Shown here: one piece after another, positions 6,301-44,600 of the stretch
Layout of the letters: the number at the start of each line of letters is the position of its first letter
How positions within the stretch are numbered: position 1 is the first letter of the stretch
Origin: Ylistrum balloti
Taxonomy: Eukaryota
Assembly: GCF_031769215.1 (NCBI RefSeq)
Contig: NW_026782240.1
Span: forward strand, 496,001-560,000
DNA: 64,000 nucleotides
Direction: 5' to 3'
The notes under the pieces: model-generated
Database searches by the model: none
The model's input: the letters and a program-made list of their open reading frames with translations, nothing else
What the model was told of the DNA's origin: nothing
Made by a program: the position numbers and the translations under genes

Positions 6301-9300
6301 CAACATATAGACAACTTTAATACCCTGACCAGACTGTAATGGACAACATATAGACAACTTTAATACCCTGACCAGACTGTAATGGACAACATATAGACAA
6401 CTTTAATACCCTGACCACACTGTAATGGGCAACATATAGACAACATTAATACCCTGACCAGACTGTAATGGACAACATATAGACAACTTTAATACCCTGA
6501 CCAGACTGTAATGGACAACATATAGACAACTTTAATACCCTGACCACACTGTAATGGGCAACATATAGACAACTTTAATACCCTGACCACACTGTAATGG
6601 GCAACATATAGACAACTTTAATACCCTGACCAGACTGTAATGGGCAACATATAGACAACTTTAATACCCTGACCAGACTGTAATGGACAACATATAGACA
6701 ACTTTAATACCCTGACCAGACTGTAATGGACAACATATAGACAACATTAATACCCTGACCACACTGTAATTGACAATATAGGAACAACTTTAATACCCTG
6801 ACCAGACTGTAATGGGACAACACCCTGACCAGACTGTAATGGACAACATATAGACAACATTAATACCCTGACCACACTGTAATGGGCAACATATAGACAA
6901 CATTAATACCCTGACCACACTGTAATGGGCAACATATAGACAACATTAATACCCTGACCACACTGTAATGGGCAACATATAGACAACATTAATACCCTGA
7001 CCACACTGTAATGGGCAACATATAGACAACATTAATACCCTGACCACACTGTAATGGGCAACATATAGACAACATTAATACCCTGACCACACTGTAATGG
7101 GCAACATATAGACAACTTTAATACCCTGACCACACTGTAATGGACAACATATAGACAACTTTAATACCCTGACCAGACTGTAATGGACAACATATAGACA
7201 ACTTTAATACCCTAATCAGTCTAAAGGACAGCATGTAATGAGTGGACATTCTTTTTTAACAATAATAAATACTCACTGTAATCTTTAGAATTTTGTGTGG
7301 AATTAACAGCATCAGAATCTGAAGCTTTGTCTAAGAATCAAAACAAGAAATTCTGTAATCATCCAGTCTTAATATACTGCATGTAAAAACTTTAGAAAGA
7401 TGAATATAACTTAAATTTTTTCAATGAAAAATTATGTTTGTCTCAAGAGAAAGATGGCAATGATTTTGATAAAGTGAATAACATTGTTTTGATGTATTTA
7501 CTTTACATGAAACATGAACATTTTACACAAAAATTATAAAACTATAAAACACAAAAATTTAAATAAAAACCTATAACCTGACTATGTATACTTACGGTAG
7601 ATAAAGGTGACAATATTGTAGAGAAAATTTGACATGAGTATCCAGTAGACAATGGCCCCGCCCAAAAGTGTCAGAAGGGATGAGACTACTGCCAGAATCT
7701 GGGCCCAACGACCCAGATAATGTTGACATACATCAGAAAAGTCTAAAGCCTCACTTGTGGAATCCGATGCTGTCAACATTTTAACATTCTGTTAGTTTAC
7801 ATATGTACATATATAGAACTACACTGAACATGTGCACAAAGAACAACAGATGTTTCACACAAATGTCCATTTAATGGTTTTATAACAGGACTGAATTTAT
7901 GCCAATTAATTTTCTGTGTAGTTAACACAATCAATTTTCTGTGTAGATAACACATAATTGTATTGAGAAGACTTGGGTTACATATTTATGCCTTGTACTG
8001 CTGTCAGTGTGTCACTAAGATTACTTACACATGTCCTGTACTGCTGTCAGTGTGTCACTAAGGTTACTTACACATGTCCTGTACTGCTGTCAGTGTGTCA
8101 CTAAGGTTACTTACACATGTCCTGTACTAAGGTTACTTACACATGTCCTGTACTGCTGTCAGTGTGTCACTAAGGTTACTTACACATGTCCTGTACTGCT
8201 GTCAGTGTGTCACTAAGGTTACTTACACATGTCCTGTACTGCTGTCAGTGTGTCACTAAGGTTACTTACACATTTCCTGTACTGCTGTCAGTGTGTCACT
8301 AAGGTTACTTACACATGTCCTGTACTGCTGTCAGTGTGTCACTAAGGTTACTTACACATGTCCTGTACTGCTGTTAGTGTGTCACTATGATTACTTACAC
8401 ATGTCCTGTACTGCTGTCAGTGTGTCACTAAGGTTACTTACACATGTCCTGTACTGCTGTCAGTGTGTCACTAAGATTACTTACACATGTCCTGTACTGC
8501 TGTCAGTGTGTCACTAAGATTACTTACACATGTCCTGTACTGCTGTCAGTGTGTGACCAAGGTTACTTACACATGCCCTGTACTGCTGTCAGTGTGTGAC
8601 CAAGGTTACTTACACATGTCCTGTACTGCTGTCAGTGTGTCACTAAGGTTACTTACACATGTCCTGTACTGCTGTCAGTGTGTCACTAAGGTTACTTACA
8701 CATGTCCTGTACTGCTGTCAGTGTGTGACCAAGGTTACTTACACATGCCCTGTACTGCTGTCAGTATACGGTAGCTGGTGTATAACATGAGGCCTGCCAT
8801 CAATACCAGCAGTATAATGCCAGTCACAAACCCGGCCTACAACAAGCAAAGACCAATTAACCAGTACATTTAATCCTTAAAATGATGGTTCATCCTTCAA
8901 CCTTGACGGCAAAATAAAAACATAAGAAAGAAAACAATTTTCCTACATTTTATTCTGCAGGATAAAAACTTGAAAGTTTTAAGAACTCTTTTTTTCAACA
9001 AAGCTGTCCCCAGAAAAAGCATACAAAGGTACATTCCTATTCTTTATTTGCAAAATATTACATCTACCCATGATGCCCCAAAATTCTTCAATCTGGTTCA
9101 CCTCTGTTATATGTTCAAAATGACCTGTCTCACCATGATATTGAACATCCTAAACATACAAATGCTGTACCTGTCTTATTGCCCAAGGCATACTTAAGAT
9201 TGATGTCCCCATCATGGTATTCCAAAGTGAAAATCTACAAGACAAATCAGTATGACATTAATTTCAAAACATGTTGTATGTTTTGTCATCAAAAATACAT

Positions 9301-12300
9301 TCAGTTGGTACAGGAAATGACAAGGAGAAAAGATAAGTACATTTTTACATTAAGTCTAAGATTTACAGATTCTTTATTATAGATGAATAAACATTTCAAG
9401 TGTGCTTGAAATACGTTTTACACTATTACTACACATAGCAAGTATCACACAAATTATTTACAGACATTAAAGGCAAGACATGTACTTTGAGAGAAACATT
9501 ATTCTTGCAAATGAATAAAGCAAAGTTTGGTTGGAAAAAAAAACCACTTCTGGAAAAAATGAAAATAACCTATCCTGCAGTATCATATCTGTCTGCAGAA
9601 ACTTAATAGCATCGCTCTTACAATATAATAACCTCCTGATTCCATCATTTGGAAAAACTTACAATGATTATTAACATTTTGCACTGTAACATGTTTAATA
9701 AATCATAGTTTTTAGGTCAAAACCATTTAAATGTGTCTCAAACTAGATCACAACCAACATATATATACAAGAGTTCCTCAGAAGTATATGTGTCGCCTGC
9801 ATAAAGTGTCACGGTCACCCAGAAATTGAACTGGATGTGCAACGTTCAACCATAAAGTTGTAATACCAAATTTCAATTCTATAACTCGAAGCATAAAAGT
9901 AAAACTGCACAAAGCCATATTCCTGAGAAATTTTCCAAGTTCAAAGGGACATATCACTGCCAAGAAGGGTTACAGACTGCCAAGAAGCAAACTCAGTGTG
10001 TAACTTTTGACCAAGAACTCATATACAAAACTGCATTTTGATAACTCGAAGCATAACCAAGAAAATTTTCGAAGTTCAACGGGGCATAACTGTGCCAAGA
10101 AAGCCGTAAATCAAACCTTATCTGTAATGTTCGACCATGAAGCCATTTCTCATATATCATGTAAAAAACTCTAAGCATAATCAAGAAAAGTACAAAAAAC
10201 CATATTCTCGAAGAATTTTCAAAGAGGCATAACTCTGTCATATACCAAATTTCATTTCTATAACTCAAAGCATAACCAAAGAAAGTTCACAAAACAATAT
10301 TCCCGGAGACTTTTCTAAGTTCAAAGGGGCATAACTCTGTCAAGAAGGCTTACAGACAGCTAGGAATCAAACTTCATCTGTACCCTTCTAACAAGAAGCC
10401 ATATACCTAATTTCATTTCAATAACTTAAAAGGATAACCCAAAGAAGTCTGGAAAACAATATTCCCAGAGAATTTTCTACGTTCAAAGGGGCATTACTCT
10501 GCCAAGAAGTGTCACAGGCAGCTGGAAATCAAACTTAATCTGTACCCTTCCAACATTAAGCCACATACCAAATTTCATTTCAATAACTCAAAGGGTAACC
10601 CAAAGAAGTCTGGAAAACAATATTCCCAGAGAATTTTCTACGTTCAAAGGGGCATTACTCTGCCAAGAAGGGTCACAGACAGCTGGAAATCAAACTTGAA
10701 ACAAATAATACAGTAAAGTTCAAGTTTTGTTCAGGTATATCCCTTTAAAAATCTGAATGAATATATTGATCAAAGCTATGACTTTCTTGACTTTCAGTTA
10801 TGATCAATAAGGAAATCGTTAATGGTATGGTTGTGCATTTCAGGTTTGTTTACAAATGGTGACTCCACACTGCTACTACTGGTCATTCATAAATTTGATT
10901 ATCTAACTATTTCAGAGGAAGGCTAATGATTTATTCTAAATGAAATAAATAGCAACTTCCTTGATGCATCTTAGCCATTGGCAAAAAAAAAAAGGAAATT
11001 ATATAAAGTTAACTTATCATTGGAAAACACCAAACAAAAAGTCTCAATGATCATCACCATTTCTCAGACAATCAAGGACCATTTATCCATCAATCACAGA
11101 ATGAAAGGAATATTTATCTACTTTTTGAGCTCTGATTTGTTAGCTGACCAAGCGTTTTGTTCAAATTTGTAAAAAGTGAACTAAAGAAATCAGTCCTTAC
11201 ATGGTGATGATGCTGTTTTGTTCACCTCGAACAGTCACATAGATCACACTGAAGAAATTTGGTGGCACCACATGGTCAGGCATTTGCTATCCAAACAGAA
11301 ACATACAAAATGATTCAAACGGATGAATAATGTTTAACAACTTACAAATTCTGTGTGTATGGTTACTCAAATATCCACTTATGTTATATATATTGCTGTA
11401 CAGTAAAAGTCTTTATTCCTAAATTTGGAAAAAAGTGCCAACACTTAATGTTGATCCAGAAAGGTCTAAAACAGCATGGGAAGTCGCAAATGAAAACAAA
11501 CACTTGACTGCCATATTGGTTTATCTTAATCAATAACAACATATTAGCAGCACTGAGATACTCATAATGGATTCACCAACAAAATTATTTTGAAGTCACC
11601 TGAATCAATCTGATAAATCGTGAGTCAAGGAAAGTACAAGAATTATCACTATACAGATCATTCAGTAAAACTTACTTTTTATGACTCTTGAACAAAAATG
11701 TTTGTTAATTTGATGCAAAACAGGAAAATCCAACAGAGACATTGCCAAAAAAAAACAACATTCAATTAAACAACATTGCAGAGACACAAGAAGAGCATTG
11801 GCTTTGCAATTGTTTGCTATAAATAATATACATTATTCTGTATACTTGAGACTTACAAAGTTGCTGTTTCTGTATGGAAACAACCTGGAATAGTACTTGT
11901 AGCGACTGACCACAGCCACGGTACTGGCATCATGGTTGGGTGTGTTGATGGAGTAGTACTGTACAGGACGCCTGTAAAATTAATTCACAAATTATCTTTC
12001 TGTTGAACACAGGACACATTTGTTTGCCCCATTACCCCAACCCATCCATTCAAAAAAAAATATCAACTTATATTAATTTGTTTGCCATTATCCTTGCATA
12101 AACATGCCTAATGTCAAAACCATGAGTTGGTGCCAAAGCTAGCCCTGGAATCTTATATGGTAAATTTCCTCTGCTAGCAGTTTTCATTCTTGAACGTAGT
12201 CTTTGAATCTCTTGCCAAAGACCAACCTCTCTGGAGCCCATATCAGTGAAATTTGACCTCCCCTTTAGTCTGACAACCACCTGACATGTTTTTTGCCATG

Positions 12301-15142: not shown

Positions 15143-15539
15143 TCCAAATCAAATATGAATCGGAAATCACATGTTAGTTTGCTGTCAATTGTGTCAAACT
15201 CTGAAATGTGAACTTTATCCACAGCAGAAAACTGCTTCCTGTTATAGTCTTTTCCAAAGTAGGATGACGCCTACAAGTATAGTGTGTTTCATGAAAGCTA
15301 CATATTTTATTTCTATATATTGTACACCGTAGTCCTCAGCGCTGTTTTTGCAACAAAAATTATCAATAAATTGAAAGTGTAATCATTAATAACATTGCAA
15401 GCCACACTATTAAAAAAGACACTAAAATGTCATTCATCCAGATATCATATCAAAGAATAACAATATGTTATTATCATGTTTTGCACTTATCAAACATGGA
15501 TTTATTACAATATATATTTAGGTCGCCACAGCTTCTTAT

Positions 15540-16575
15540 TAGTTTAAACATATTTTATTCGACAAAGCTGTAAATGGATTGGGCACAAGTTATTTCAACT
15601 TATAAAACGCCCTCTCCAAAATACAAACAAATAAACACAATGTACATAATACAATTATGACAATACGTATTTCAAATCAACAACAAATTGTTATTTATAG
15701 AAAGAGTGGGGAAGTAAGGGAGAGGGAGAGAGAGAGAAGGAAAGGGATGGAGAAGAAGAAGAGAGAGAGAGAGGGGGGGGAGAGATAAATCAGTTACATC
15801 GGATTTAGATATTGAAAATGGCATGAACCGTTATACTTAAAACCTGCTACTGGACTTTAAACAGTGCTGAACACATGAAAAATTCACAGTTTGTATCATA
15901 CGACAACTCTTGGTTACCAAATAAAGGCAATTCTAAATCACAAGGAACCTGCAAATCTAAGTCGTTTAGATTCTGGAAGAGAATATTTCTTTCAGTATCA
16001 AAACGACCATATACAAAGAAAAAATGACAGGCATTCTCACAAATATGTCCACATGTGCAGCTAGAGGTTTCCACAAGGCTCAAACGGAATACGTTGTAAT
16101 TTAAAGAACTACACTGGTGTCTAAGCTTCGTGTGGATAATATCAAGTTTGCGGTCGCCAATGCCAAAGTGAAAAGGAGGAGAAAATTGATTACTAGGTAT
16201 AAATGAACTTTTGAAAATACTTAAAGAAGCCGATGATCTTCCAGAGTTTTCGAGAGAATTCCAAGAACGAATGCTGTTGACGGAAAGAAAGAGGATCTAG
16301 TTAAAGTTAATCTACTATATGGTACTCTGTAATCGTTTGTGTTTCTTAAAGGATATCGAACATCGTCTTGGATAGAGGAGGGAAGTAAAGAGGAAAGATA
16401 ATCCGGAGTTTGATTATTACGTATCTTATACAAAAGCTGAAGTTTTCTTCTCTTTCTTCTAGTCGATAGAGTTTCTAAACCTGTTTCAAAGTATAAAGAT
16501 TGGTTACCTGTATAAGATGGAAGACCTGTGATAATTCTGGCTGCTTCACGTTGAGCTTTTTCTAACTACATTATT
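15540..16575 (-). mobile_element. 5'-truncated CR1/L2-like non-LTR retrotransposon (ORF2 C-terminus and 3' UTR)
   Basis: EKAQREAARIITGLPSY..LYFETGLETLSTRRK (frameshift) YKIRNNQTPDYL..RYPLRN..RSSFFPST..SCTCGHICENACHFFF; 3' UTR with a GA/CT-rich tract, ending aataaaatatgtttaaac on the minus strand. Confidence 0.8.
15716..15786. repeat. GA-rich microsatellite inside the retrotransposon 3' UTR
   Basis: gggagagggagagagagagaagg...gagagagagagggggggagaga. Confidence 0.9.
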
Positions 16576-18381
16576 TTTTTATTTAACGCATGTAAAAACA
16601 TAAAAAGGCGAACACAATACTAGAATATATGGCTATCTTGAATACACTGACAAAGGAATCCGGTTTGTTCAAGAGTCTAAGACGTTCACTAAGAAATCTA
16701 GAATATGTTCTAAAATAAAAAGCACCAACAGCGCACCTCCAAGAATCAATACAACATCCCATTATGGAGAGTAAAAATAATAATTTTTGACAGTATTGAG
16801 GCGTCTAGTGGTACTTTTTCGAGCACAAAACCATACATCATCCGAGTAACTATATAACATAAATGGTAGGAAGTAGAAGTTTGTGAGGAAAGGTGATAGT
16901 AGGGGTTCGAGAGAGAAGAAAGTGAGTTTGGACGCAAAGAAAGTAATAAGGAAAGCAATGAAACAAAGTTTAGGAAAGAAAGTCGATAAGTTCAGGAATA
17001 TTGATATAGAAAGGGAAATAGGAAGGACAGGTAAAGTAACAGAAAGCATGAATATATACATATTTAAGGTGAGGGTAATTAACTGTCCTGATACAGGTTG
17101 AAATAATGATGTTAATTTGAGATACAATCGGCCTGAACCTGAAGGTACACATGGCGGTGTAAAATTTAGTTTTAGCTATATACATTTGCTATTTTCATAT
17201 TGTACATGTCTTTACAAAATACTCACAAGCTGAGTAAGGTGTGAACGAAACTTCAAAACAATACAAACTGCACTCGGGGCTGAAACATAATCAGGGTACT
17301 CAAAAAAACTACATACATTTGTATGTCTTACAGTTCAAAACATTTCGTAAGAATGAACTATGTATAGAACTAGACACACGATTTAACATGACACATAGTG
17401 GTGTCCAGTAGATATATAGATACTACCTGTCAGGGATATATCTTCTATAAATACACATTGTACTATTTAGTACATTTACAGTGTACATATCGTATGGGAA
17501 AAAAACTGTTCTGTACGTATAGACTCAAACAAACAGAAAATGAAACATAATGATTATATCTAGTTGCAGTCTTTTTCTATTGGTGTTATTATTACAGTAT
17601 ACCAAAACTGACAGCCATGCCATTACAGACTTACATTTATATGTAAATGATTTCGACTTGCGCTAGCCTGATCAACTGTACCGAGAGCCTAGACTACACG
17701 TTGATAAAAAAAAACGCTAGCCTGACCAGGCTCCAGAGAAAAAACTTTTTTTTTTAAGGATTTCGATTTTTCAAAATAAATACTTTTTGTACGTAGGTAC
17801 ATGTAGTACGGTAAATATATAGTACTGTAAGTACTAAAAGGTAAAATAAATACCTATTGTAAGTATGAATTATAATATATATATGGTATGGGTATGTTTA
17901 CGTCATACCTGAGTGAGAGAGTGGACAATGTGTAGAAGTCACATGACCATAAACTAAAGTACGTACACAATTTCAAAATGGCGTCGTCCACTTCGGGTGG
18001 GTTTTGCCGACATCATTCAGGTACTCTACTTCCTTTATAATTGGGCATTGGCGCAAAGAAGACTAGAATGACAGTATATTTTATGGAGAAAACCATTTAC
18101 GACGTAATTGTGTACTTTTCTAGTTAAACCCGATCAACTGATCTTCCGGGTCGACCGTCATTAGGATAGCGTTCACAATTCTATAACAATATTGATCATC
18201 TGGCTCTTTACGATAAGATATAAACAATATCCACATCCCTAATTATTAATATTGTGATATCATGTAATTTCATAACCCAATTGTGTGAAAAGAGCGCTTA
18301 ATTTGAAAAATTTAAATATTATTGTAAAATTCGTATCGTTCGTAATGGTGGAATGTGCATGCCTCTCAAGTAATCTCGTAG

Positions 18382-18461
18382 GCGCATGCGCAGCCAGATT
18401 TCATTACACATGCAGCGATGGCACAGAATAGTCCTACAGCTCCCACCGAGACCTGGTAAGA
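18382..18461 (+). promoter_or_regulatory. NRF1-type palindrome followed by a candidate short first exon
   Basis: GCGCATGCGC at 18382-18391; ATG at 18418 reading MAQNSPTAPTET, then TG|GTAAGA donor at 18455/18456. No downstream partner exon found. Confidence 0.3.
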
Positions 18462-20163
18462 CAGACTGACCAGTGTCATATTATTGTATATAGTTTAAAT
18501 CCATTTATTACTTTCTGTTGGATGTTTATGTGATAATATTTATCTATATCTGTCTACTACAGTATTTATATTGTAATTGTAAGCTTGTGTAAAATATAAA
18601 TAAACCACTACAGAACCTTAGAAAAAGTGTCCATGTACTGATTTAACCGAGAGGACCTTACAAATATACAAAGCAAATTAGCATTGTTTAGTTAGTTACC
18701 AGTTGATTTCAATATATGAATGAAAATCTAATACCACAAAGACGTATGTTGCCCTATTCAACAGCCTAAAAATGAAAACCATATAGCCGAGCTATCATCT
18801 GTTTAAGTGCATCTTTATACAGTTGCCGTTTATAAGCCATACCATATTTGGTTAAAATCGAATTTCCGTCCAGAAATAAGTGATTATTAACGACAAAACT
18901 TTCAAAAGTTACAGGAGTCGGATTTATTAAAACATCGAAACGGTCAGAAATTATAATATTTGGCAGGTAGATTCGTGGAATGAAGGTAAAGTTTGCGAAC
19001 TGGAATGACCTTGACTGTATTCAACAATGTTTAGTCATAAGTGATATCAGCTTTCTAGCTTTTACTCAGTTTATATCAACTGGATATCTCCAGTTTGTAT
19101 GTACGGCATAGACTCTGCTATAGCTATGTCTCTAAATACTGAGTGTAGAACCTAATCCAGTTTAACATGTCTGAAAATATGTAAATGCTCATGGATGGAC
19201 ACTTAAACAAAATAAGTTTGAACGTTGTATGTGTTAAAAGAAATTACTTTTAATATAAGCAAAGTATTAACCTCTTATTTTGCTTAATTCATGAAGTCAT
19301 AAATCTAATGGAGCACAAGGTAGCAGTACACAGTTTCTCGGTGTGGACATGGGTGATTTTTTTGCTCATTAGATTACCCCATTATAAAGGTTTTAATTAA
19401 AAATGGAAAAAAAAATCCTTGCTAAAATTGGTCCTGTCATGTTAAAGTGGGCAATGTGGGGTTTCATTTTTTTTTTTTTCAGGATAATATTTTAGCTTTG
19501 TGTTGGAGATTACTATTTGGGCAGTCTCGAATCTGTGTCTACGCACCAAAAACTAGCTTTACAGGAAGTGAAATTTTCATAGTGTTTACATGTGTTCATG
19601 TTATGAAGAGTTTCCGAGTTGGAATTTGCTGAAATGTAAATACTTTGTTACCATGACAGTGTTGTTAATTGTAAGATAGGTGTTTAGAATTAAATTTCTC
19701 CTAGAAAGTTATAGTGTTGGGTTGGAATTAGCAGTATTTTTGCATTTTTAGCATTTTTTCAGTAGGTAACCATGACAATCAAATGTCAGAAATCAGAGGA
19801 ATTTTTTTTACACAAATTTCATCTCTCTACTGTTAATGTAATTGTTATACAGTTTATAAATATATATACATGTAATGATGTATTTTTCATAACCAATCTG
19901 CTAAACCTGTATATCTCAAACATGTTTCAAACAAAATAATTTCAGGAAAAATGCAAATTAATTGTTTACTGCTACCCAAGGTAAATTGCTCGTAAACGTG
20001 ATCTCGTTGTTAAAACATAAATTTATGATCTAATGTCACTTATATACAACAAACCAATATAAGCAGTTGGGCCATTATAGTCATTTAACTAAATCGTTCT
20101 ATAACTCTCTACACACAAGCGAATGAAGTCGGATTTACTGTACATCTCTGCAAACTGATGACC

Positions 20164-21783
20164 TCAGTTTTTGTAGTACTTGATGGTTCTTATTTCAGAC
20201 TCATTGGATTCAGACAGCACATTTAGGACCCTTCCAACCAATCCACTTTTGTTCAGAAGAACACACACCACACCCACAGCATATCGCCTGACTGAATGCG
20301 AATTGCTGATATGCCATCTGTGTTCTTCTGTATTGCTCCAATGTACATTCCTTTTCCACTGACCAGCTCTACATCATGAAATACAGTTTCAATAACTAAA
20401 TTGCTTCTGTTGTCATAGACAGCTGACCATGGACTGAAATGTGGTTGTCCATCAGTTTCATCTCCTCCGTAGTTAAATAGGAACTTTAGTGTTTTCTCAA
20501 ACACAACAACTTTCCTACACCGCTTGTCATCACGTTGTTTACACCTATATACTACTGCAAGGTTACTTGTCATTGGACAGTGTGAAACAGATCTTGGCAT
20601 CGTGTAGCTCTCTTCAACATCGACAGAGTTTAACACGTGGCCTTCTGTTGTGTAGACCTTTATACTGTGCAAAGTACACACCGCTACATTTTCCTCTCTT
20701 GTTATGCAAAGACAAAATGTTTGCGTATCTGTTGTAAACCTTGCCTTTGGCGAAGTTGAACCAGGAACAAGTTCAAAGATTGAATTGCTTCCGAGGCAAA
20801 TAAACCAAAGACTGTTTGTTTTTGGTGAAGTGCAGATACATGGTATGGTCGAACATTGCTTGATCTTATGTTTTATATTACCTCGAAAGTCCACTAGTAA
20901 CAACTTGTCAGACTGCCAATGACTAAGCCAAACACCACTGGGAGTTGGGCAGATTGCAGAGCATTTCATAGGATTCCTGAAGTGTTTCTGTACAGCTGGT
21001 AGTGCAAGCAAGTCCACGTTTGGAGTTGTCTTATGGTGACTGACATCGGAAGGGACCTCTGTAACTGGACGTTGTGCAGTTGTACCCCGAGATGTTGTGT
21101 TAGTTGATGTCGATTGGTCTTTCGATATAGTCAAAGTGCCAAGAATTTTTCTCAGTTGTTCAGTGATGGATGTTCGAGATGGATGAAAGTCAGCGTCATG
21201 CAAGATGGGTTCATCAGGATGTGCAGGAATATCAGTTGAAAGAGCGGGCGATTCATCGTACACCTGAACTGGGCTTCCAGTCTGTAACACCATTTTACAA
21301 TCTTTTATTTGTTCAAAGAGTGACTCGTAATTGTTCTTTAGCTCGACTTTGTACAAAATCTTTGTTCTCCGCTGCCAGCCTTTTGGATAGTGCGTCATAC
21401 TTATCGATTATGACGTCAATCTCCTGTTTACAGACTTCACCCTGCTGCTTTACAAGTTGACAAGACTCTTGGAACTTTGCGTCGTTTTCAGCTAGTCTGT
21501 TGTCAATTGAATCCATTTCTTTCTGGAGCTGGACAAGATCGTTATTCTCAATGTCATTAATAAAATTCTGCAGTTTGGTTTTCCTTTGTAATGTAACATC
21601 CGAGAGCTCCACGAGACTGTGTCACTTGTGAGTGGAAAGGCTGCATGTAAGACAGATAAGAATATTACAGTCCGAGCAGTGTAACAGTACATCCTTATTT
21701 CTGTGGACAGCACACTTAGAGCTCCCCTTCGCCCTAATAGGTGTCTGGCCATGGCTCTCTACCGCAGGTACGCTTGCAGCCAT
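20164..21783 (-). pseudogene. Intronless B-box / coiled-coil / NHL-like beta-propeller (mollusc-expanded TRIM-like) pseudogene
   Basis: MAASVP..GQTPIRAKGSSKCAVH..CSDC..CLTC..THK*HSLVEL has an in-frame TGA (21622-21624) where Gly is expected. Coiled coil follows, then a frameshift near 21350-21360 into LKNNYESLFEQIKDCKMVLQTGS, propeller repeats (AICPTPSGVWL, FCLCITREENVAV, PWSAVYDNRSNLVI), and a probable third lesion near 20270 before ..TIKYYKN*. Confidence 0.8.
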
Positions 21784-23869
21784 GACCAACGCTCTAATAT
21801 GGCGCCACACACCCGGATGTAACGGGAACACATCCTCGGTTGTTATCATGCCTACACGTATACATTTACACTTGAACAACATCATGATATTGCAAAAACG
21901 GAATGAATGCAGTCATGTGTCTCCAGACAAACAGAATATATACAAAAAAAATTATCTCTAATTTTAAAATTTGCTCAACGAAAACAAATTAATTCATAAT
22001 ACCAGAGAGATCAGTTTTCTGGTACCTGGATGTAGTTATATGACTTGAAATATACACAACATTAAACTGCTAACCCGTATTGACTACCCAAACAAGTTTG
22101 AATGATATCCACTGAAATTAAACAAATGATGTTAATGAAAACTACAGAAAACTATATCTCTCACAAATGCACAATTTTGATAAAGCATAATCAGTATCAT
22201 TCTATCATATCTGGGTATTGAGAAGAAGTTTTTGAAACCATTATGAATCATTTTGGCCCCATCCTGGATGTATCTGGGTATTCGGGACGACCTATATGAT
22301 TTGAAAATCGGTTCATGAATCGATTCATGGGATTTTGAGAAATAGGGTCGATCATGTCGCAAATGTAGATTGTTTGCATTCACACAATGTCGGACAAAAA
22401 GGCGACGTAGGTCACGTGTGATTTCCTCTCAGGTGACCTTAAAACCAAGAAAAAGTCTTAAAACTATGATAACCAGGTGGGCGCAAATATTAATAAAATA
22501 TGTTGAATTTCATTTTTTTTATTACCTTTTCCCCAATTTTTCAGGGAGTGGGAAGGGGGGGGGACACGTAGTTGTAAGATAGAACGAAAGCTTACAAAAT
22601 CCAGGCTATCTAGATTTCGCAAGTTGCATATATATATTTTATATTAAAACATCATGTAGTACTAGTACATCGTTATGTTCTTAGTATAAAGAAAGTGGTT
22701 TACTTGCAAAAGCGATGGCTGTATGTATGTGAAGGTTTGATATATGAATCAAGAAGTTTACATCCTACCATACTTTCAGTACATCAATGCGCCTGTCATT
22801 TCCTACAGTAACTTGAAGCCCTTTGTGTCCGAATCTTTCAATTACAAACCAAAGCTGCAGTAGCTGAATTTAGATGATCCAAGAAACATTCCTTTCCGAC
22901 GTGCTATTTTTTATATTTCTTCTTGGCACAGCTGTACCATATGGTTGCAATGACCATTTGGAAATTTGTCTAGTACCCCTAACGCTATGACATTTTTACG
23001 TCGTAATCGTATACACTGACAGCTGTATTACAATTAACCTACCGTATACCTTATGGAAGCTTGCTTAAGCGGATTCGGCTAATACTGCTCCTGACGACCT
23101 GTGGTAACTAGCTTGGAAATTTCATAAGATTATTGATGGAACTGAAACAAATAAGTTCAAGTTCTTTATTACCTTGAGTCGTGTGACTCATTGGTTAAAG
23201 CAAACAACACATAGACGATTTACAAACATATAACAATATACAAAAAAAAACAGAAACAACACAAACCCGGAGAGAGTAAACTAGGCTATCAATTGCGGTT
23301 TTCTCTTAAAATGCAAGCTGCCTTAATATATTTAGACAAGTTTGTTATTTCTTTTGTATTGTTCGCATTTAAGAATTCTATCAATTTAAACATACTAAGA
23401 CTCTTAACTATTTGTCAATTTTTGAAAGCTGAGTTGGCAATTAAGAGAACGGGTGCTTTAAACAGTAATATCTGTTCAGGGTTACACAAATACATAAAGC
23501 TACTCGAAGTCTACTGCGTTTAACTTTTCAATAACAAACAAATGCTACAACAACTTAATAAAGATGACCTGAGAGCTCTCAATAGTGGCGAATTCTGAAT
23601 AAGGGCAAAGTTAGGAGAGGGGTGAAGGGGGCGGGGGTCCAAATTGGCTCAATAATGATAAAGAACAACACCAAACCAAATGGAAATCAACACTTTTCAC
23701 ATAATACTATATATATTGTTACATGGCCCCTGACATTCGATGCTATACCCCCTGGACAGGTTGTGAACGGGGATATCGGATTTGTATGTCCTGAGCAGGA
23801 TATCCACGGAAAGTCAAGGCTGTACGTGCTGAACAACTTGCTAACACCCGCGGGAAGTCGAGAATGTAC

Positions 23870-31344: not shown

Positions 31345-32010
31345 AGTGAGGTTCACAAGTACACTAACCTATACAGTGAGGTTCACATGTACACTAACCT
31401 ATACAGTGAGGTTCACATGTACACTAACCTATACAGTGATGTTCACATGTACACTATCCTATACAGTGAGGTTCACATGTACACTAACCTATACAGTGAG
31501 GTTCACATGTACACTAACCTAAACAGTGAGGTTCACATGTACACTAACCTATACAGTGAGGTTCACATGTACACTAACCTATACAGTGATGTTCACATGT
31601 ACACTAACCTAAACAGTGAGGTTCACATGTACACTAACCTAAACAGTGAGGTTCACATGTACACTAACCTATACAGTGAGGTTCACATGTACACTAACCT
31701 ATACAGTGAGGTTCACATGTACACTAACCTATACAGTGAGGTTCACATGTACACTAACCTATACAGTGAGGTTCACATGAACTCTATCCTATACAGTGAG
31801 GTTCACATGTACACTAACCTAAACAGTGAGGTTCACATGTACACTAACCTATACAGTGAGGTTCACATGTACACTAACCTATACAGTGAGGTTCACATGT
31901 ACACTATCCTATACAGTGAGGTTCACATGTACACTAACCTATACAGTGAGGTTCACATGTACACTATCCTATACAGTGAGGTTCACATGTACACCAGCCT
32001 TAATAGTGAG
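31345..32010. repeat. 30-bp minisatellite, about 22 near-identical copies
   Basis: Unit gttcacatgtacactaacctatacagtgag; explains ORFs 31387-32031 and 31826-32077. Confidence 0.98.
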
Positions 32011-32643
32011 GTCCAAATGCATACTAGCTAGACTAAAACGTGAGATTGACATGTACACGTTCAAGACATATGTTTGAGATCCTTGAGTTAATGGCACATA
32101 AAATGATGTAAACAAGACAAGTGTCTAGACTAGTATTTCAACTATGAGTGACTTGATGAATAAAAAAATATATTTGTATATTAGATGTCTTCTTTGTGCT
32201 ATCTAGTACAAAAAAGAAATACCACAGTTTGAAAGAAGTTTTATCTATCGCAATAAAAATGTTTGCAGATTCAGCTGAACATCGGCAACAATCTTGTTAC
32301 CTCCCTTTCTAACAGTACCTACAATGATCAAACATTGCACGTAGGCTAGTTACTAACTAATGACCATAAACAGTCATCAGACATCATTTCTTTTGGTCAA
32401 CACTGCTGAGAAAAAAATTTCAATACAATTTGCGATCATCCTTGTTGTTAGTCACATTTTCTTTTTTTCAAAAGGGAAAACAAGGTTGATCAATGTTTGA
32501 AAAAGATGTACACTGAATTTGATCATTAACTAAGCTGAGCTACGAGACCAAGAAAATGATCCATCCACCTTGTATCTAGAGATAGATAGTACCCAGAAAT
32601 TGAAACAACAGTAACAAATATAACATAAAAAATTTAGTTTGAT

Positions 32644-35600
32644 CTATCTGCCAGCTTCATAACCAGGAAAGAAATTCTGTAATATTGTCCGCAGTGTTTT
32701 GTTAACTTTGAGTTCATCCTCATCCTGCTTCAGGTCAGTTCGACACATAGGACAGCTGTACACCTCAGCTTTGAATGATCTGAGTAAACATGGCTGAAAC
32801 AAAATATAAATTACTAATAAGACAACAATGCAGACAAAACCCTAATGTTTAATTCATATTTTGTAATTCAGAAGAAATTTGCAGGTGAGGACAATTGAGT
32901 TTGTTGTGACAATTAAAGACTAACACTAACAAAACAATGATCTTCTCTTTCAGAAATCAGTCCCAATGTACCTAAATAACAATTTGGCTTTTTTAAAGAA
33001 AAAAAAAAAAGAAAAATTCAACAAGAGGCTCATGGGCCTTAACGATCATCAAACTACAAAAACTTCCGGTAGGGAGAAGGGTTATTTTTTTTCTACTTTG
33101 AATGAAACCTTACTAAGAAGCTGTTTTCCATGATGCAAAAGGTAGTTTTGGTTAAGTGTTGGTAACTGTAACAAGTGTTACATATGTTTTGCCAGTAAAG
33201 TGTGAAATAGATATTGCTTAGGAAAACCATGATTGTGCAATCATGTTACAAACTGGCCACCCTGGCTGCTGTAGCGAAGTTTTGACGAGGTCGAAAAATA
33301 ACAACACTTTGTCTTTGTTGGCTATCTTTCTTTAACATTCCCACTATTTTTTCTTTAGGTAAATGGCACCATTGGAACTGGAGAAGAAGTTCAAAATATA
33401 TTTTTCAAGATTGTGGCCATGGCAGCCATCTTGGATTTCAGACATGCCTGAAAAATAACAACACTTGGTCAGGATCATCTCAGGATCATTTCATGCAAGT
33501 TTGTGCTCAATCCAAGTGGTGGAACTTGAGAAATTTGAAATGTCAAAAGTTTACACACTGCGGATGATGACAGACAAAGCATGATGACTATAGGTCATCA
33601 GATAACCTAAAAATCAAACTTGCCAAAGACATGCTTCAGTTTTAGAGATAAAGGACACCAGATTGCTTCCTGCTGTATCAACACGTTACACATTAAACTT
33701 ACCTTACAGATATTATGGTTGCAGACAGTTGTGACAGGTTTGAACACAACCTCCTGACAACAGATACAATTGAAAAGCTCCTCTACTTTCCCTAGAAACT
33801 TCTGCAAAAGAATTGATGTAAAGTCACGAAGCGTGTATTTCCTATCCAATTGTGTATAGGTAAGGTCATATATTGAAGTTTCTGTAACAATACAGCAATA
33901 TTATTTCATACATTATTCTATCAAACAGAAACGCATCCCAAAAATGACAAAAGGCTGTTATGCTGATATCAAATCCTGTTATCTCAAATCTGATAGCCTC
34001 ACTTACTGAATGCCTGTCTACAAAAATCATGAAACTAAATATGGCCAACAGCTAGACAGTGTTTTTCCAGTTACCAATATATTTCCACAGCAAATATTGT
34101 CTTCACACTGAAATAACTTTTCCAGAGAATAGCTCATTTCACTCTATACACATAATAGATTGTGTTGCAGTTCTTCGGAGTTTTGTCTTCATACCAAGAA
34201 TGATAGTGAACATGTTAAACCTAAACCTGACCTTTAAATTTAAATGCTTCCATGTCACTTACCTGTCCCCCCTCCTTGGTAAGTAACATAGCATCCTCCC
34301 ACAGCTTTTTGTTAATTTCATCCTGTTTGATGAGCTGTAGCTGTGCCGAGTCTATTTTGTATTTGGCCACCTTCTGTTTCTTCTCTGGAGTGCCACCTGG
34401 TGAGGAATCTGGACAAAAGATGAATAATTTTTTCAATGTTTCAGTGGGTTATGGGCAAAGCAATGCTGTCAGATTATGTGTAAAGACATTCCTAGACAAA
34501 TTCCAAGTCATTATCTGTGATAATTCAAATCAATACATTAAAATTTGAATTGTTTGCGTCCTTGTTTCTGGCATGTACACCTAAATACATGTCAGTTTTG
34601 AAAAGAAACTGAAAAATGTGTATCTGCAAAGAAACTCTAATGGATAGTTCAATGGTGCCAATAATTTGATATTCCAGACAAAAATATCTTTTTTCATTTG
34701 AAGGATGTGAAGTTTAACATTGCCAATAGGATACTTTGAAAGCATCTAGCAGGAGACATTTAAACCAATGTATTGTTGAGTTTTAAGACTACAGAATAAT
34801 CAGCTGATCAAGTCATCTTTCTGTTGTATCAGTCTATGATAAATACATCAGAACAGTTTGGATTCCAAATGAAAGGTATAATAGATTTAGTGATCATTAA
34901 TATTTTAAGTTGAATGCAATGTCCTGTTTTGTGAAGATTATTTCCTATTAATATATTACCTAGTTGTTGTTGTCTGGTCTAGAAAGTGTTAAGTGTTAAT
35001 CCTTTCCTGATTGAATAAATCTTTTAAATATTTGGATATATTATTTGGGATATTCCCTCATTTCAATATTAATATGTATGTACCCAAGTAAGTTTGTTTC
35101 CTCACTTAGTATGGAGTACATACCAGAGTCACTTCTCTTCCTCTTGCCTTTTCTCTTCTTCCCAGAAGAGGATCCTGATGTTTCCTCTTCCTCCTCTTTC
35201 TTCGCCATGGCCTCCAGATACCCAGCAGGATACTTTAGAAACATGCAGGTATACAATCACTTTTCACATTCAGATACAGTTTTAGATCACCAACTTTATG
35301 AATAACAGTTGGAGGAAATACCAATGTTATTTTAAGCAAGAGGTGCAATGGGCCTGCATCACTGACTTGGTAATTGATGTTTTTTTGGTTTTTTTTTTTT
35401 TTAAATATATGTCATTGCTTTCCAAAGCAAATCTATCAAATTTATCCATTTACCTGTCAGATAAATCTATCAATTTTATCCATTTACCTGTCATATAAAT
35501 CTATCAATTTTATCCATTTACCTGTAAGATATCATGATTATAGGATTTTCAGCTGAGCAGAGGAAGTCATATGAAAAATTTAACAAATATGACTTGAATA

Positions 35601-38600: not shown

Positions 38601-41600
38601 GCAAAAGATGAAAATGAACAGGTCAAAATATCTTCACAGGGCGTGTATCTTTGCTTTGCTGACAGCAATTCCAATGATAGAAAATGGTTGGAAATATTTA
38701 CACCAATGAATGAAACTATATAAAAATGAATGGCTTCGATGGTGATGAAGACAGGAAGTATCTGGCAAGACAATGAGTACATGATGTGATGTACTAGCTC
38801 TCACAGGTAGACCACAAACTGTGAATCATTTGACAAAATTTGAGGCAAGATATCTCTTTAAACTGACCAATAATTACATTGATTATCTTTATCATGGCCC
38901 AAGCATATCATGATGAATTGAAAGAATGGCTGAAGAAACAACAGCTAAAAATGGTGTCTAGATGATAGCCTGTTTCAGACATAATTATCACGATATGGCT
39001 GGTCCAAACAATATTTTAAACCAAATTTAAAAGATAACATGCATGAATAATTTTTCTTTTGTCAATTTCTTTTTTGCAAGGGACTGTTGACCTGTAACTG
39101 GATGATCATCCCTCCCCTTTGGTTGGTGTCATAATTGCAAGCATTCCTAGAAGACATCTAAAAGTGGGGACAGAGCTGATATGCAAGTTGGGGCTTATCT
39201 AATGGAAGACAAAATAATACACAATGCTGACAACTCATTTTAACATGAAAGATCAGTACAGACAACACTATCAAAACACCCACTTATTCATGCGTGTCAG
39301 AACCTGGTCACATGACTGTTCTGCTGTACGCTTATTTCCAGAAAGGTCGCGACCTCCACTTCCTGTGTAAGTAAACTGTTCTCCATCATCCTACAACATA
39401 AAAATCAACTTATTACAACATACAAAAGAATTTTTTTTGTATTTTGCCATAAATTTTTATTCTATGAAAGTGTTGTTATAAGGCTCCTTTTTTTGAAAAT
39501 TTCTATCTCTTTTCCTTCTTTCTAAAATAACTTTTTCTTTGCGCTTAACAGAATATTTTTATCTTGTAAACTGTTTAACAATAGGCAATAAAACTCAAAG
39601 CTGCAGAACACTTAAGAACAAGATGTAAATGGGGTAATGCCTCCACTTTAAGACTAAACACATATGGCAGACTTTATTATGATATATTTTGTCCCAATGA
39701 CACATGTATCTATTATGGTCTAAATGTTGTATTTCATCAAGCAACCTGCTTCTTTAGGATCTTCATTCCTGCCATTTTTGTTATACATATTAGACATGGG
39801 TGTACAATTCTGTGAAGAGACAGTAAGTGAAAATGTCATTTTGATTTTAGGATCTATGGGTCTAAATTACAAATCAAGCAAATCCTGATGATTTTGTAAT
39901 TGAAACAAGATCATTTGTGGTTAGAGCTAAGCCTTTGATAGGTGTGACCTAACATTATTAATCAAAATAAGTTGGCTTTCTAAATGGAATAATTTAATAT
40001 TTTAGTTACATGCAGATATGTATATTTGACAAATATTCAAACATTGCCTTTCTCAGTATTTTTTGTTGGCTTCACACTTGAAACATTGAAAATTTATAAA
40101 TTAAAACTTCAACTCTATCACAGGTTTTCCTATGAGATTTAATTGTTGCCTAAAGTGCTTCCTACTGGAAATTGAGATGGAGGAACGAATTACATGTATC
40201 TAGAAAGTAAAAAAATCAGAAGCTTCTTTGTTGAAATGGTTGTATTCAGGTTTTAACATTATATTTTGTTCTTTATGATTTAACAGTTGAAGTATATTTC
40301 AGTTTGCTTATATAAAAAAAACACTTTGACCTGATTGGGTCATGGTAATTAGCTGTCTGAATATGCAACTTGATTATGTATTATGTACCACTTCAATGAA
40401 ATTCATGTATCCTTGTAGTATACATGTATGTTAATTAATTTCTTTCATGTTAATTATCAACTTATTGTACAGAAACTAGACAAACAGTACCATATGCATA
40501 TGTTTCATGCTTTATTGAACAACACAGATTTTATCAATTCTATTAAAGAAACCATGAATTTCAGAGATTTAGTGTTAATTAAAAAATTTTCCAAAGGTGG
40601 GGCTACCCATACTGAAAAAAGTGCACCAAAGTATACTTTAATGTTGCTTTTAGTACATACATTAGTGTACTTTTTCTGAAAAGTACAAGAAGTATACCTT
40701 TTTTGTACTTTTCAAATCAAGTCATCATAACTGGTATTTTTTGTACTAAATTTGGACTATTTTGTGCTTTTTGAGACTTTCAAAAGTACTTGTTAAGACA
40801 TATTTATGTTCTTTTTGTGTGGTTTCTGAAATTACCTGTAAAATACTATAAAAGTATTTACAAGTACAAATTAAGTACACTCATTTTGGTCTGTGCTTTT
40901 TCAATACTTTGTATGATTTTTGTACTTTTATGATACTATTTCTGTACTATTTATGTACTTGATCTGTGGTATTATCAAATATACCAAAAGTATACTGTTA
41001 TTAGCCTTTTTTGTACAAATGAACTTTTTTGGCCTCAATTTGGGATGTTGAATTTTCAGTTCAAAATTCAGCCGAAAAAAGTCTATTTTTGTACTTTTTT
41101 CTGTACTATTTTTATACTTTATTTCAGTATTAGTTTTGATCAGGGCTAGTGAGAAAAAGTGTTCAGGTTATCAAATCATTTAAAGAATACAACAATTCAT
41201 AGTCACAGAACACCTAAATGGCTGATAATTATTAACAATAAGGTGAGGAAATTGTACCTTGTCATCTTCATAGCCTCCAGAAAGTACAATAGAAAATGCT
41301 CCAACATCTTCACGTCCATGGATACCAGCCACATGTGGTCTGTGTACTCCAGCCTCGCTAACCTATTAAGACATGTAACACAGTATTCTTATCTCCAATG
41401 ATTAAATAAAAGCTTCAAAGCTATCTGGAATACAATACCTAATACAAGTTTCTGTCCTTTTGGGCAGTGTGGTTAGTGTAGTGGATATGTGTAGTGATAT
41501 AAATAACATTTAGTACAAGTTTCTGTCCTTTAGGACAGTGTGGTTAGTGTAGTGATATAAATAACATTTAGTACAAGTTTCTGTCCTTTAGGGCAGTGTG

Positions 41601-44600
41601 GTTAGTGTAGTGATATAGATAACATTTAGTACAAGTTTCTGTCCTTTAGGGCAGTGTGGTTAGTGTAGTGAAGTGTAGTGGATATAGATAATAAGAATTA
41701 TGGAAATCCAATTCAATACAAGTGATTTCAAAATTAGTTTATTCTTAGAAATATCAAAGTTTTTTCCCCCCAACTTATCTTGGGGTACAACTTTTAAACA
41801 AATTTTAATCTTTATTTTAACTCTAAAACTTTGTCTGAATAAATGAATACTTACCTGAACCCTGAACTTCCACAGGGTGCCAACCTCTACACCAGGAATG
41901 GACCCAAAATGATTTGCTGGAACAACTGTGCACACATTCTGTCGGCCCACACAAGCCATTCCCTGAAATAGTGAGATTTCCTACCTTTAATTCTGCACTA
42001 AAGATAGTCCCTTCCATGAACATATTCTTGTTCATAAAAATATAACATAGGCTTCAAAATCAATCTAATCTTATTCTTAACACATATGCATTATGGTCCT
42101 AATGGTACTACTTGCAGAAGTTTTAATTTGGTCCTAATGGTACTACTTGCAGAAGATTTAATTTGGTCCTAATGGTACTACTTGCAGAAGATTTAATTTA
42201 ACTATATTCACAGTCTAATGCATCATTAAATAGCTGTCAACTCTCAACAACAAGGACAAACCTAAAAATTGGCTTCAAGAAATTAAAGAACTACAAAGTG
42301 TCCAAGGTAGTTGATAACACAAAAAAAGTTATTACTATCCAACCTTACCCTGCCCCAATCTTGTCTTGTATAGATATTAATACAGAACCTTACCCTGCCC
42401 CAATCTCGTCTTGTATAGATATTAATACAGAACCTTACCCTGCCCCAGTCTCGTCTTGTATAGATATTAATACAGAACCTTACCCTGCCCCATTCTCGTC
42501 TTGTATAGATATTAATACAGAACCTTACCCTGCCCTAATCTTGCCTTGTATAGATATTAATACAGAACCTTACCCTGCCCTAATCTTGCCTTGTATAGAT
42601 ATTAATACAGAACCTTACCCTGCCCTAATCTTGTCTTGTATAGATATTAATACTGAACCTTACCCTGCCCCAGTCTCGTGTTGTATAGATATTAATACAG
42701 AACCTTACCCTGCCCTAATCTTGTCTTGTATAGATATTAATACAGAACCTTACCCTGCCCCAGTCTCGTGTTGTATAGATATTAATACAGAACCTTACCC
42801 TCCCCCAGTCTCGACTCGTGGAGTTTGTTGATGATGCCATCCTGGCTTTCTTTTTGCTTTCTTTTAACTTCTCACCAGCTTTTACAATTGCATCACTGTC
42901 TGTTTTACAATCTGGACAATACCTGTAAAAGTATCTGTGTGTAAATAAATTCATCAATGTGTACTGAAACATGTTTTCCATCATGTATACAGGATACCAG
43001 ATATTTGGTTTTCAAACTTTTTGATTTTTTGTAATATGTGTTTGAAAAATTTCGGCGTATATCAGATACATCTAATGAACTCCAACCAACCTTCTGGAGA
43101 TTATATTACACATACATGTACAACTCATTGATCTTAAATCACTCTTTCATTATTCCGAATTGAAGCCAAACTTGTTGCTACAAAAACTTATCACCACTTG
43201 TGAGGTAATTTGCCCTCTAGACACATCTAAATTCTGTCTTATCAAAAGGTATACTTTTCTGAGGAATATTTAAGATTAGTATACTGCAAATTCATGCGGA
43301 GAGAGATTTTTGGCTAGTCACTTTCATGGTATGGGTTTAAGAAAATGTATACTGCTACAAAGAGTGAAACAGTATATCAGTGTTACAAAGACTACAAGGT
43401 GAAGTAAAAGCACTTTAACGTAATCTTTCTGCTACATCATAGAAATTGCTCTTCATTTTGTTTTGAAGTAATTTTCACATGTGCAGATGCACAGAAGTCA
43501 ATGAAAGACCAGATAGTATCCTATTAGATAACATGATATCAAATAGAAAATTGTAAAAATTTGGTTTTAATAATGAACACATCAGATGAAGTATCATTTC
43601 ATGTGCGATTAAACATTTTCAAGGCTCCCTAAAAAAATTGCAGTGTTAAGGGTAATATCATAATGAATTCAAAATTTGATCAAAATTAAAATACACATGA
43701 ACATGCTGTTTTCCCAATTTGGAGCTGCCTCCTCCTTGTCATTGGACTGTATAAAAACCTACCACTCATCGTCCTCAGGAATACTGTCGAGCGGAGGGTT
43801 CATACACTGGAGATGGTAGGCCTGGTCACACTCATCACAGAGGATCTGTTTGTCAGGGTCGTTCTTACCACCACACACACAACAAGCACAGTGCTTACAT
43901 TTCCTACGAGGGTTGTCCATGCAATGACTACAATCTGGCTTGTTCTGACCTGCAGATAAAACAATGAAAATAATCAAATGCCTCTCATCATGTGAGGAAA
44001 AGTTGTGCAATGACAAGCACCGTAAAGGTTGGGTCTTATGTTTTATATACATTTATTTGGTTGCTACTCAACAGTAAACAATTGATAAAGTTCACCATAA
44101 AAGTTTGTAAAATTGCTTTCTGGCAGATGATTTCCCATGGTAACATACGCTAACTTACGTTTCACAGGTGATTGTGACGGATCTTTAGTAACATCTTCCA
44201 CATTAAGTTGTGTACCAGCTTTTTCAATTTCAAATATTTCATTCAAAAATAGAATGTTGCAGTCATCAAGAGGCATGAGGTCAGGGCTGGATAGAAAAAA
44301 ATTAATCATAACTGCAAGCTTCTGAACTATAATCAACACCTGTGGCTTTCTCATTGCAATTTCTTTTATTAATTTGATGCAAAATATAAATATTCTTGAG
44401 CAACTTTTCACTGTAGATCCAAATTTTGATGTTCATATCAAAAGAAGGATTATTTCTTTCAGTTCATTTTGTAAGCTCCTCAGCTACAATAAATATCTTT
44501 TTGCTCCATGTAGATGTTTTTATGCAAAATAATACAAGAAGTAACTTTGTAGATATAAAATTTGTTATTTTATCAGGAAAAAATGCTTTTCAATTAAAAA

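What the first reader, a model, noticed from the sequence alone, without database searches (positions are those of the whole stretch)
7990..42815. Recurring pattern: minisatellites nucleated exactly at exon/donor junctions in two unrelated genes
Seen: two arrays of unrelated sequence and similar unit size (43 and 45 bp) both begin inside an exon, include the donor, and expand only into the downstream intron. Two such cases among about ten arrays in 64 kb seems high given how little of the window lies next to a donor (not formally tested). Inference: a genome-wide mutational bias (duplication at 5' splice sites, e.g. R-loop or polymerase-pause-associated slippage) or selection that tolerates such arrays; a possible raw material for exon extension and intron evolution. 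I cannot tell whether this has been described in bivalves.
Basis: inference. Interest (0 to 1): 0.7.

Follow-up and report, generated by a model that had tools for sequence, protein, structure and literature searches.

The report
Splice-donor minisatellites in two scallop genes
Two bivalve genes (SLC38A9 and UHRF1) each have an intron that begins with tandem copies of the preceding exon end plus its splice donor; this kind of repeat is already known from amphioxus and several human genes, but it is unusually common at donors in this genome.

Summary
Confirmed. Both genes are on the minus strand.

- **SLC38A9:** a 43-bp x 18 array (7971-8770) starts 23 nt inside an exon.
- **UHRF1:** a 45-bp x 11 array (42327-42821) starts 15 nt inside an exon.
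- Each unit carries the exon end, the GTAAG donor and 20-30 nt of intron. That gives 17 and 10 decoy donors.
- Neither unit matched anywhere else in the genome.

**Known kind.** These match the 'mirage' minisatellites of amphioxus and the human F7, IFI6, CBS, LMNB2 and PDGF arrays. In F7 only the most upstream donor is used. This scan has already reported the same pattern many times on other DNA of this genome.

**Frequency.**
- In the window the excess is marginal: about 0.3-0.45 expected, 2 seen.
- Genome-wide, three tandem copies of AGGTAAGT occur 7.3 times as often as the same word read backwards. AGGTGAGT gives 3.4x.
- Two acceptor words give 0.9x and 1.5x.
- Two motif-picked arrays both start at real exon ends.

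So a donor-side excess is real. Its cause, mutation bias or filtering, is open. In two large arrays elsewhere in the genome, decoy donors are no better conserved than the rest of the unit, which argues against function. No RNA data were available.

The parts
7971..8770 (-). Array 1: 43-bp minisatellite. It has 17 full copies, one 26-nt partial copy and one degenerate distal copy, with 18 GTAAGT donors (1 authentic, 17 decoys).
8743..8836 (-). SLC38A9 exon (reads AGFVTG...LTAVQGM, phase-1 end). Its last 23 nt (8765-8743) form the exon part of the repeat unit.
8737..8742 (-). Authentic SLC38A9 donor GTAAGT, the first of 18 identical hexamers.
7597..7769 (-). Next SLC38A9 exon (acceptor AG 7771-7770, phase 1).
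42327..42821 (-). Array 2: 45-bp minisatellite of 11 copies, with 11 GGTAAG donors (1 authentic, 10 decoys). The distal copy is degenerate.
42799..42922 (-). UHRF1 exon (end of the PHD finger plus linker, ends ...SRDWGR, phase 0). Its last 15 nt form the exon part of the repeat unit.
42793..42798 (-). Authentic UHRF1 donor GTAAGG.
41855..41962 (-). Next UHRF1 exon (GMACVGR..., likely start of the SRA domain; the Pfam SAD_SRA match is below threshold, 15.7 bits against 30.7). Its donor is CAG|GTAAGT.

Best explanation
Both arrays are locally born minisatellites of the junction-spanning ('mirage', F7-IVS7) type. A short segment straddling the exon-intron boundary (23+20 nt in SLC38A9, 15+30 nt in UHRF1) was duplicated in tandem. 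It was then expanded and partly homogenised by slippage or unequal exchange, so the intron now starts with 17 or 10 extra copies of the gene's own 5' splice site.

Shown: the anatomy, the conserved exon ends, and the local origin of both units.

Inferred: the spliceosome uses the first, authentic donor, as shown experimentally for the human F7 array, so the copies are silent intron and nearly neutral. Occasional use of a decoy would give a stop two codons later in SLC38A9. In UHRF1 the first decoy would add 15 in-frame residues, and later decoys run into a TAG.

Genome-wide such arrays are several-fold more frequent at consensus donors than at control words, and less so at acceptors. I read this as asymmetric tolerance (upstream decoy acceptors would be used and are purged; downstream decoy donors are ignored) plus a donor-linked excess of birth or expansion whose cause is not established.
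For: Anatomy and exon identity.

Local origin: each unit matches only its own locus in the 648-Mb assembly.

Turnover: the degenerate distal copies, and a 4-unit higher-order repeat that includes the authentic copy (8556-8598 matches 8728-8770), fit array turnover.

Known kind and tolerance mechanism: PMC3087553 and PMC3902484; PMC1557585.

Genome-wide triplet counts, word against the same word read backwards:
- AGGTAAGT: 7007 against 955
- AGGTGAGT: 2082 against 610
- AGGTAAGT with spacer 50-80: 5260 against 642
- Single-word counts differ only 1.26-fold
- Acceptor words: 1498 against 1712 and 8449 against 5767

The 8 donor arrays listed all have different units. By contig C17 there are 8 donor arrays against 2 control arrays. 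Both motif-picked arrays with flanks start at the end of a coding exon, Peptidase_M14 (E 3e-12) and Nudix_hydro (E 2e-5, 25.1 bits, just under the 26.5 cut-off).

Neutrality of decoys: in those 28- and 52-copy arrays the 9-nt donor window ranks 14 of 31 and 24 of 33 for conservation.
Against: - No RNA run holds this locus, so use of the first donor is inferred from the human and amphioxus work.
- The in-window excess is marginal (P about 0.04-0.08).
- In 190 kb of randomly placed sample the donor-score enrichment among 38 arrays is only about 1.6x and not significant.
- Triplet counts are weighted by array size and have heavy tails. Composition-normalised null values differ among themselves about 3-fold.
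- Acceptor words are degenerate, so the donor/acceptor contrast is rough, and earlier notes of this scan list acceptor-side arrays too.
- In the two window arrays no decoy has lost its donor, but this is not significant (my arithmetic: P about 0.17 and 0.24).
Confidence: 0.75

Rival explanations
1. No donor-specific process. In a genome where about a fifth of the DNA is minisatellite and introns are short, random tandem duplications will now and then straddle a donor, and the two cases here are coincidence.
For: In-window expectation is 0.3-0.45 against 2 seen, only marginal. 22% of 254 kb lies in arrays, with 38 arrays in the 190-kb sample. The sample enrichment of donor-like units is 1.6x and not significant. 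The five other intronic arrays of the window are unrelated to their junctions.
Against: Tandem triplets of AGGTAAGT and AGGTGAGT are 7.3x and 3.4x their backward controls, while the single words differ 1.26x. Both motif-picked arrays sit at real exon ends.
Confidence: 0.13
2. Donors are true mutational hot spots for minisatellite birth or expansion, for example through transcription- or splicing-coupled stalling at the 5' splice site. In this view tolerance plays a minor part.
For: An excess over random words cannot come from purifying selection alone. The excess holds for two donor consensus words and two period ranges. Decoys look neutral.
Against: No direct evidence of mechanism. Acceptor-side arrays also exist (1.5x). 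Counts are size-weighted, and arrays inside genes may simply be younger and more homogeneous than arrays elsewhere.
Confidence: 0.3
3. The decoy donors are functional and kept by selection, for example as extra U1 snRNP sites that help exon definition or suppress premature polyadenylation, or as alternative 5' splice sites. In UHRF1 the first decoy would give an in-frame 15-residue insertion.
For: All 17 and 10 decoys in the window keep the donor hexamer. The first UHRF1 decoy is in frame and open. Human IFI6 and CBS use their two proximal pseudo-sites (PMC1557585).
Against: Donor retention in the window arrays is not significant. In the 28- and 52-copy arrays the donor window is no better conserved than other unit positions, and 3 of 28 and 6 of 52 copies have lost the GT. 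Any SLC38A9 decoy leads to a stop two codons on, and UHRF1 decoys 2 and beyond hit a TAG.
Confidence: 0.07
4. The arrays belong to a dispersed satellite or a transposon that inserted next to the donors, and the likeness to the exon end is chance.
For: Bivalve genomes carry transposon-borne tandem arrays (my own knowledge, not tested here).
Against: Each unit matches only its own locus. The exon parts are ancestral: RDWGR aligns with RDWGK of mouse UHRF1. Homology stops exactly inside the exon.
Confidence: 0.02

Closest known systems
Amphioxus 'mirage' minisatellites (Adh3, globins BflGb6 and BflGb9, troponin C, PGBD5)
   Same: Tandem repeats whose units span an exon-intron boundary, so splice signals are reiterated. 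Units are 10-160 bp. They show concerted evolution inside the array with divergent edge copies, and regular splicing is reported as undisturbed (PMC3087553, PMC3902484).
   Different: Different phylum. In amphioxus both boundaries are reported without a stated donor preference, whereas my genome-wide word counts here favour donors. Somatic instability, shown for Adh3, was not tested here.
Human minisatellites whose first monomer spans the exon-donor boundary: F7 IVS7 (37 bp x 5-9), IFI6 (25 pseudo-sites), CBS IVS13, LMNB2, PDGF intron 4
   Same: The first unit holds the exon end plus the donor, followed by identical pseudo-donors in the intron. Period and copy number are similar. In F7 only the most upstream site is used, by a 5'-to-3' scanning-type choice (PMC1557585).
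   Different: These are isolated cases in human. Here the excess of donor-word triplets suggests that thousands of donors carry such arrays (rough extrapolation). Splicing at the two scallop loci was not observed.
Intron gain by tandem duplication of an AGGT-containing segment
   Same: A tandem duplication creates extra splice signals from existing sequence. Mirages have been proposed as raw material for new introns and exon extension (PMC3087553).
   Different: No new intron or exon is seen here. The copies lie inside an existing intron.

Membership tests
Junction-spanning ('mirage' / F7-IVS7 type) minisatellite | Head-to-tail array of short units (about 10-160 bp), three or more copies | tested here: met
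   43 bp x 18 and 45 bp x 11
Junction-spanning ('mirage' / F7-IVS7 type) minisatellite | The first unit contains the authentic exon-intron boundary, so the splice site is reiterated in the intron | tested here: met
   The exon ends align with PDB UHRF1 and adjoin SLC38A9-matching exons. The units hold 23 or 15 exon nt plus GTAAG.
Junction-spanning ('mirage' / F7-IVS7 type) minisatellite | The unit derives from the locus itself, not from a dispersed repeat | tested here: met
   The own-genome search finds only the locus itself. The tool gives lower bounds only.
Junction-spanning ('mirage' / F7-IVS7 type) minisatellite | The authentic site is still used and the pseudo-sites are silent or minor | not testable with these tools
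   No RNA run holds the stretch. This is inferred from PMC1557585 and PMC3087553.
Junction-spanning ('mirage' / F7-IVS7 type) minisatellite | Copy-number polymorphism or instability | tested here: inconclusive
   The one DNA run is held as contigs of about 10x depth that break inside the array. The array-exon junction is covered.
Selected cluster of functional 5' splice sites | Donor positions of the copies are conserved above the rest of the unit | tested here: not met
   The donor window ranks 14 of 31 and 24 of 33 in the two large arrays. The window arrays are too small to tell.
Dispersed satellite or transposon-borne array | The same unit occurs at many loci | tested here: not met

The most novel reading that the evidence does not exclude
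5' splice sites are genuine hot spots for the birth or growth of minisatellites in this genome, through a transcription- or splicing-coupled mutational process. Under this reading a few per cent of all donors carry such arrays, and the arrays feed exon extension and intron evolution.
Probability: 0.3. Interest if true: 0.65.

Novelty: new member of a known kind. Interest (0 to 1): 0.35.

Why it matters
The two arrays themselves are ordinary members of a described class. The scale is what may be worth a paper: a genome with about a fifth of its DNA in minisatellites, where consensus donors are amplified several-fold more often than control words. That would make it a natural system, with thousands of loci, for two questions. 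How does the spliceosome choose among identical donors? And are exon-intron junctions mutationally special? The arrays also matter for annotation. Gene predictors and short-read assemblers will stumble over introns that begin with 10-300 perfect donors.

Tried and rejected
- **RNA evidence:** the run search returned one run, DNA-like contigs, and no RNA. Laying it showed only that the contigs break in the array.
- **Larger random sample:** The annotation-free donor-score test on arrays therefore has only 38 arrays and no power.
- **Two sample arrays with strong donor-like words** (L009 2431-2675, L014 1911-2263): no obvious exon beside them.
- **Other intronic arrays of the window as 'detached' junction copies:** their local alignment scores lie within those of shuffled units.
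- **Arrays at 35429-35531 and 31345-32026:** they carry donor-like words but do not abut an exon.
- **First attempt at copy extraction with best-match regex:** it skipped copies and was redone.
- **Literature search for molluscs:** nothing on junction arrays. The abalone TSSK1 paper describes an ordinary intronic minisatellite.
- **Spliced models:** all protein searches were made exon by exon by reference. Frames across junctions were only checked in a local script.
Full report
**What is there.** Tandem Repeats Finder lists 13 arrays with period >=15 and >=2.5 copies in the window. Two are the ones flagged.

- Array 1: TRF 7994-8765. In register it is 19 copies of 43 nt over 7971-8770, among them a 26-nt partial copy and a degenerate distal copy of 81% identity.
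- Array 2: TRF 42341-42813. In register it is 11 copies of 45 nt over 42327-42821.

The two units share no sequence. Each matches only its own locus in the 648-Mb assembly (the tool gives lower bounds). The window is G000:C383:496001-560000.

**The genes.** Both read on the minus strand.

Gene 1 is an SLC38A9 orthologue.
- The exon at 7597-7769 hits zebrafish SLC38A9 structures (6c08, 4.5e-11) and Pfam Aa_trans above threshold.
- The exon of interest is 8836..8743. Its acceptor AG is at 8838-8837 and its donor GTAAGT at 8742-8737.
- Joined to the acceptor at 7771-7770, the frame stays open.
- Homology between the repeat and the exon runs to 8765. The unit is therefore 23 exon nt plus 20 intron nt.

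Gene 2 is UHRF1.
- The exon 42922..42799 aligns over its whole length with mouse UHRF1 residues 364-404 (5.6e-15), ending RDWGR where mouse has RDWGK.
- The next exon (41962..41855) starts GMACVGR. Its Pfam match to the start of the SRA domain is below the family's threshold (15.7 bits against 30.7, E 0.013).
- The exon end is thus ancestral and the copies derive from it. The unit is 15 exon nt plus 30 intron nt.

Counting donor hexamers gives 18 GTAAGT in array 1 and 11 GGTAAG in array 2. All protein searches were made exon by exon by reference.

**Consequences for the message (inferred, no RNA).**
- In SLC38A9, reading past the authentic donor meets TAA two codons later, so any decoy would give a truncated, probably unstable message.
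- In UHRF1 the unit is 45 nt. The first decoy would add 15 in-frame residues. From the second decoy on there is a TAG.
- No RNA run holds this stretch. The one run found consists of DNA contigs at about 10x depth. They break inside the array but cover the array-exon junction.

**Array dynamics.**
- Edge copies are the most divergent.
- In array 1 the copy at 8556-8598, together with the unit before it, carries the same variants as the authentic copy at 8728-8770. This is a four-unit higher-order duplication that includes the real junction.
- This is the usual picture of unequal exchange with edges left out of homogenisation, as described for amphioxus globin mirages (PMC3087553).

**Is it known?** Yes.
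[quoted passage not shown] They are reported not to disturb splicing (PMC3087553, PMC3902484).
- In human, the F7 intron-7 37-bp minisatellite has a first unit that spans the exon-7 donor. IFI6, CBS, LMNB2 and PDGF have the same layout.
- In F7 the pseudo-sites are functional, but only the most upstream site is chosen, by a 5'-to-3' scanning-type process. IFI6 and CBS also use their two proximal pseudo-sites (PMC1557585).
- Earlier notes of this scan, which gave me the 'mirage' and F7 leads, report the same pattern in many other windows of this genome. They call the genome the scallop Ylistrum balloti, which I did not verify. They also report acceptor-side arrays.
- I found no published report for molluscs in the searchable library.

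**Is it more than chance? Within the window: marginally.**
- From open frames I count about 16 UHRF1 donors in 15.8 kb and about 9 SLC38A9 donors in 9.2 kb.
- Seven or eight arrays lie inside these genes. Random placement of their units predicts 0.3-0.45 donor-spanning arrays, against 2 seen (P about 0.04-0.08, my arithmetic).
- The five other intronic arrays are unrelated to their upstream junctions.

**Is it more than chance? Genome-wide: yes.** The own-genome pattern search counts a word in three tandem copies and, as its control, the same word read backwards.

| Word (x3) | Spacer | Count | Backward control | Ratio |
|---|---|---|---|---|
| AGGTAAGT (donor) | 20-50 | 7007 | 955 | 7.3 |
| AGGTAAGT (donor) | 50-80 | 5260 | 642 | 8.2 |
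| AGGTGAGT (donor) | 20-50 | 2082 | 610 | 3.4 |
| TTTTYAGG (acceptor) | 20-50 | 1498 | 1712 | 0.9 |
| TTTNCAGG (acceptor) | 20-50 | 8449 | 5767 | 1.5 |

- As single words, AGGTAAGT and its backward form differ only 1.26-fold (42,555 against 33,891).
- For TTTNCAGG, about a third of the listed arrays read CAG|GTR and may in fact be donor arrays.
- The eight donor arrays listed all have different units, so this is not one dispersed family.
- By contig C17 there are 8 donor arrays against 2 control arrays.
- Only two motif-picked arrays came with flanks. Both begin at the end of a coding exon. L035 is a Peptidase_M14 exon (E 3e-12), 31 bp x 27. L024 is a Nudix_hydro exon (E 2e-5, 25.1 bits, just under the 26.5 cut-off), 33 bp x 54.

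**Caveats on the genome-wide test.**
- The counts weigh arrays by size and homogeneity.
- The null values, once scaled by base composition, differ about 3-fold among themselves.
- Acceptor words are degenerate.
- A 190-kb random sample is too small. It holds 38 arrays, and its donor-score enrichment of 1.6x is not significant.

**Function or by-product?**
- In the two large arrays the nine donor positions are no better kept than other unit positions (ranks 14 of 31 and 24 of 33). Three of 28 and 6 of 52 copies have lost the GT.
- In the window arrays every decoy keeps its donor, but with 6-7 variable columns this is not significant (P about 0.17 and 0.24).
- I therefore read the decoys as neutral intron.

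**How it most likely works.**
- A local tandem duplication straddles the donor (shown).
- Slippage or unequal exchange then expands it (inferred from the copy pattern).
- The first donor is used and the rest is spliced out with the intron (inferred from F7 and amphioxus).
- Equivalent arrays on the acceptor side put decoy acceptors upstream of the real one, where they are more likely to be used, so fewer survive (inference).
- Tolerance cannot explain an excess over random words. Some donor-linked bias in birth, growth or persistence is therefore needed. I give it about 0.3.

**Verdict.** The repeat type is already known, the scan has found it repeatedly in this genome, and these are two more members. 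The genome-wide donor excess is the part worth a proper annotation-based test.

Noticed in passing
L005-L023 (19 x 10 kb from 19 contigs) plus the window: 22% of 254 kb lies in tandem arrays. The 190-kb random sample holds 38 arrays of period >=15, several of them 3-10 kb long. This is an unusually minisatellite-rich genome.
   Followed up: partly
window 8513-8770: Higher-order structure in array 1. The copy at 8556-8598 and the unit before it repeat the variants of the authentic junction copy at 8728-8770, four units further on. The real exon-donor copy therefore takes part in array turnover.
   Followed up: partly
window 8754-8755 and 7789-7790 (minus strand): A second in-frame splice pair is possible in SLC38A9: a weak donor GTACAG after ...RILTA (phase 0) joined to the AG at 7790-7789 (phase 0). 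It cannot be told from the GTAAGT/7771 pair without RNA.
   Followed up: no
window 42327-42821: Variation among the UHRF1 copies is concentrated in the exon-derived 10 nt (columns 6-15 of the unit). The donor and the intron-derived part are almost invariant. The unit also contains GGGCAGG, which recalls the human minisatellite core (my own knowledge).
   Followed up: no
window 5297-7213: The next SLC38A9 intron holds a 43-bp x 45 array with the same period as the junction array but unrelated sequence. It lies about 380 nt from the donor and is not similar to it.
   Followed up: partly
window 20256-21912 (minus strand): Long open frames (384 aa and neighbours) with a B-box-like cysteine pattern and a coiled-coil-like stretch. 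This is probably a single-exon TRIM-like gene between SLC38A9 and UHRF1.
   Followed up: no
window 15850-17175 (minus strand): Open frames of 114-149 aa that look like the C-terminal part of a LINE reverse-transcriptase protein. This is probably a decayed retrotransposon.
   Followed up: no
L024 1194-3084 and L035 1531-2360: Two further donor-junction arrays elsewhere in the genome: 33 bp x 54 after a Nudix_hydro exon (C7:167392-) and 31 bp x 27 after a Peptidase_M14 exon (C7:411522-).
   Followed up: partly
   Followed up: no
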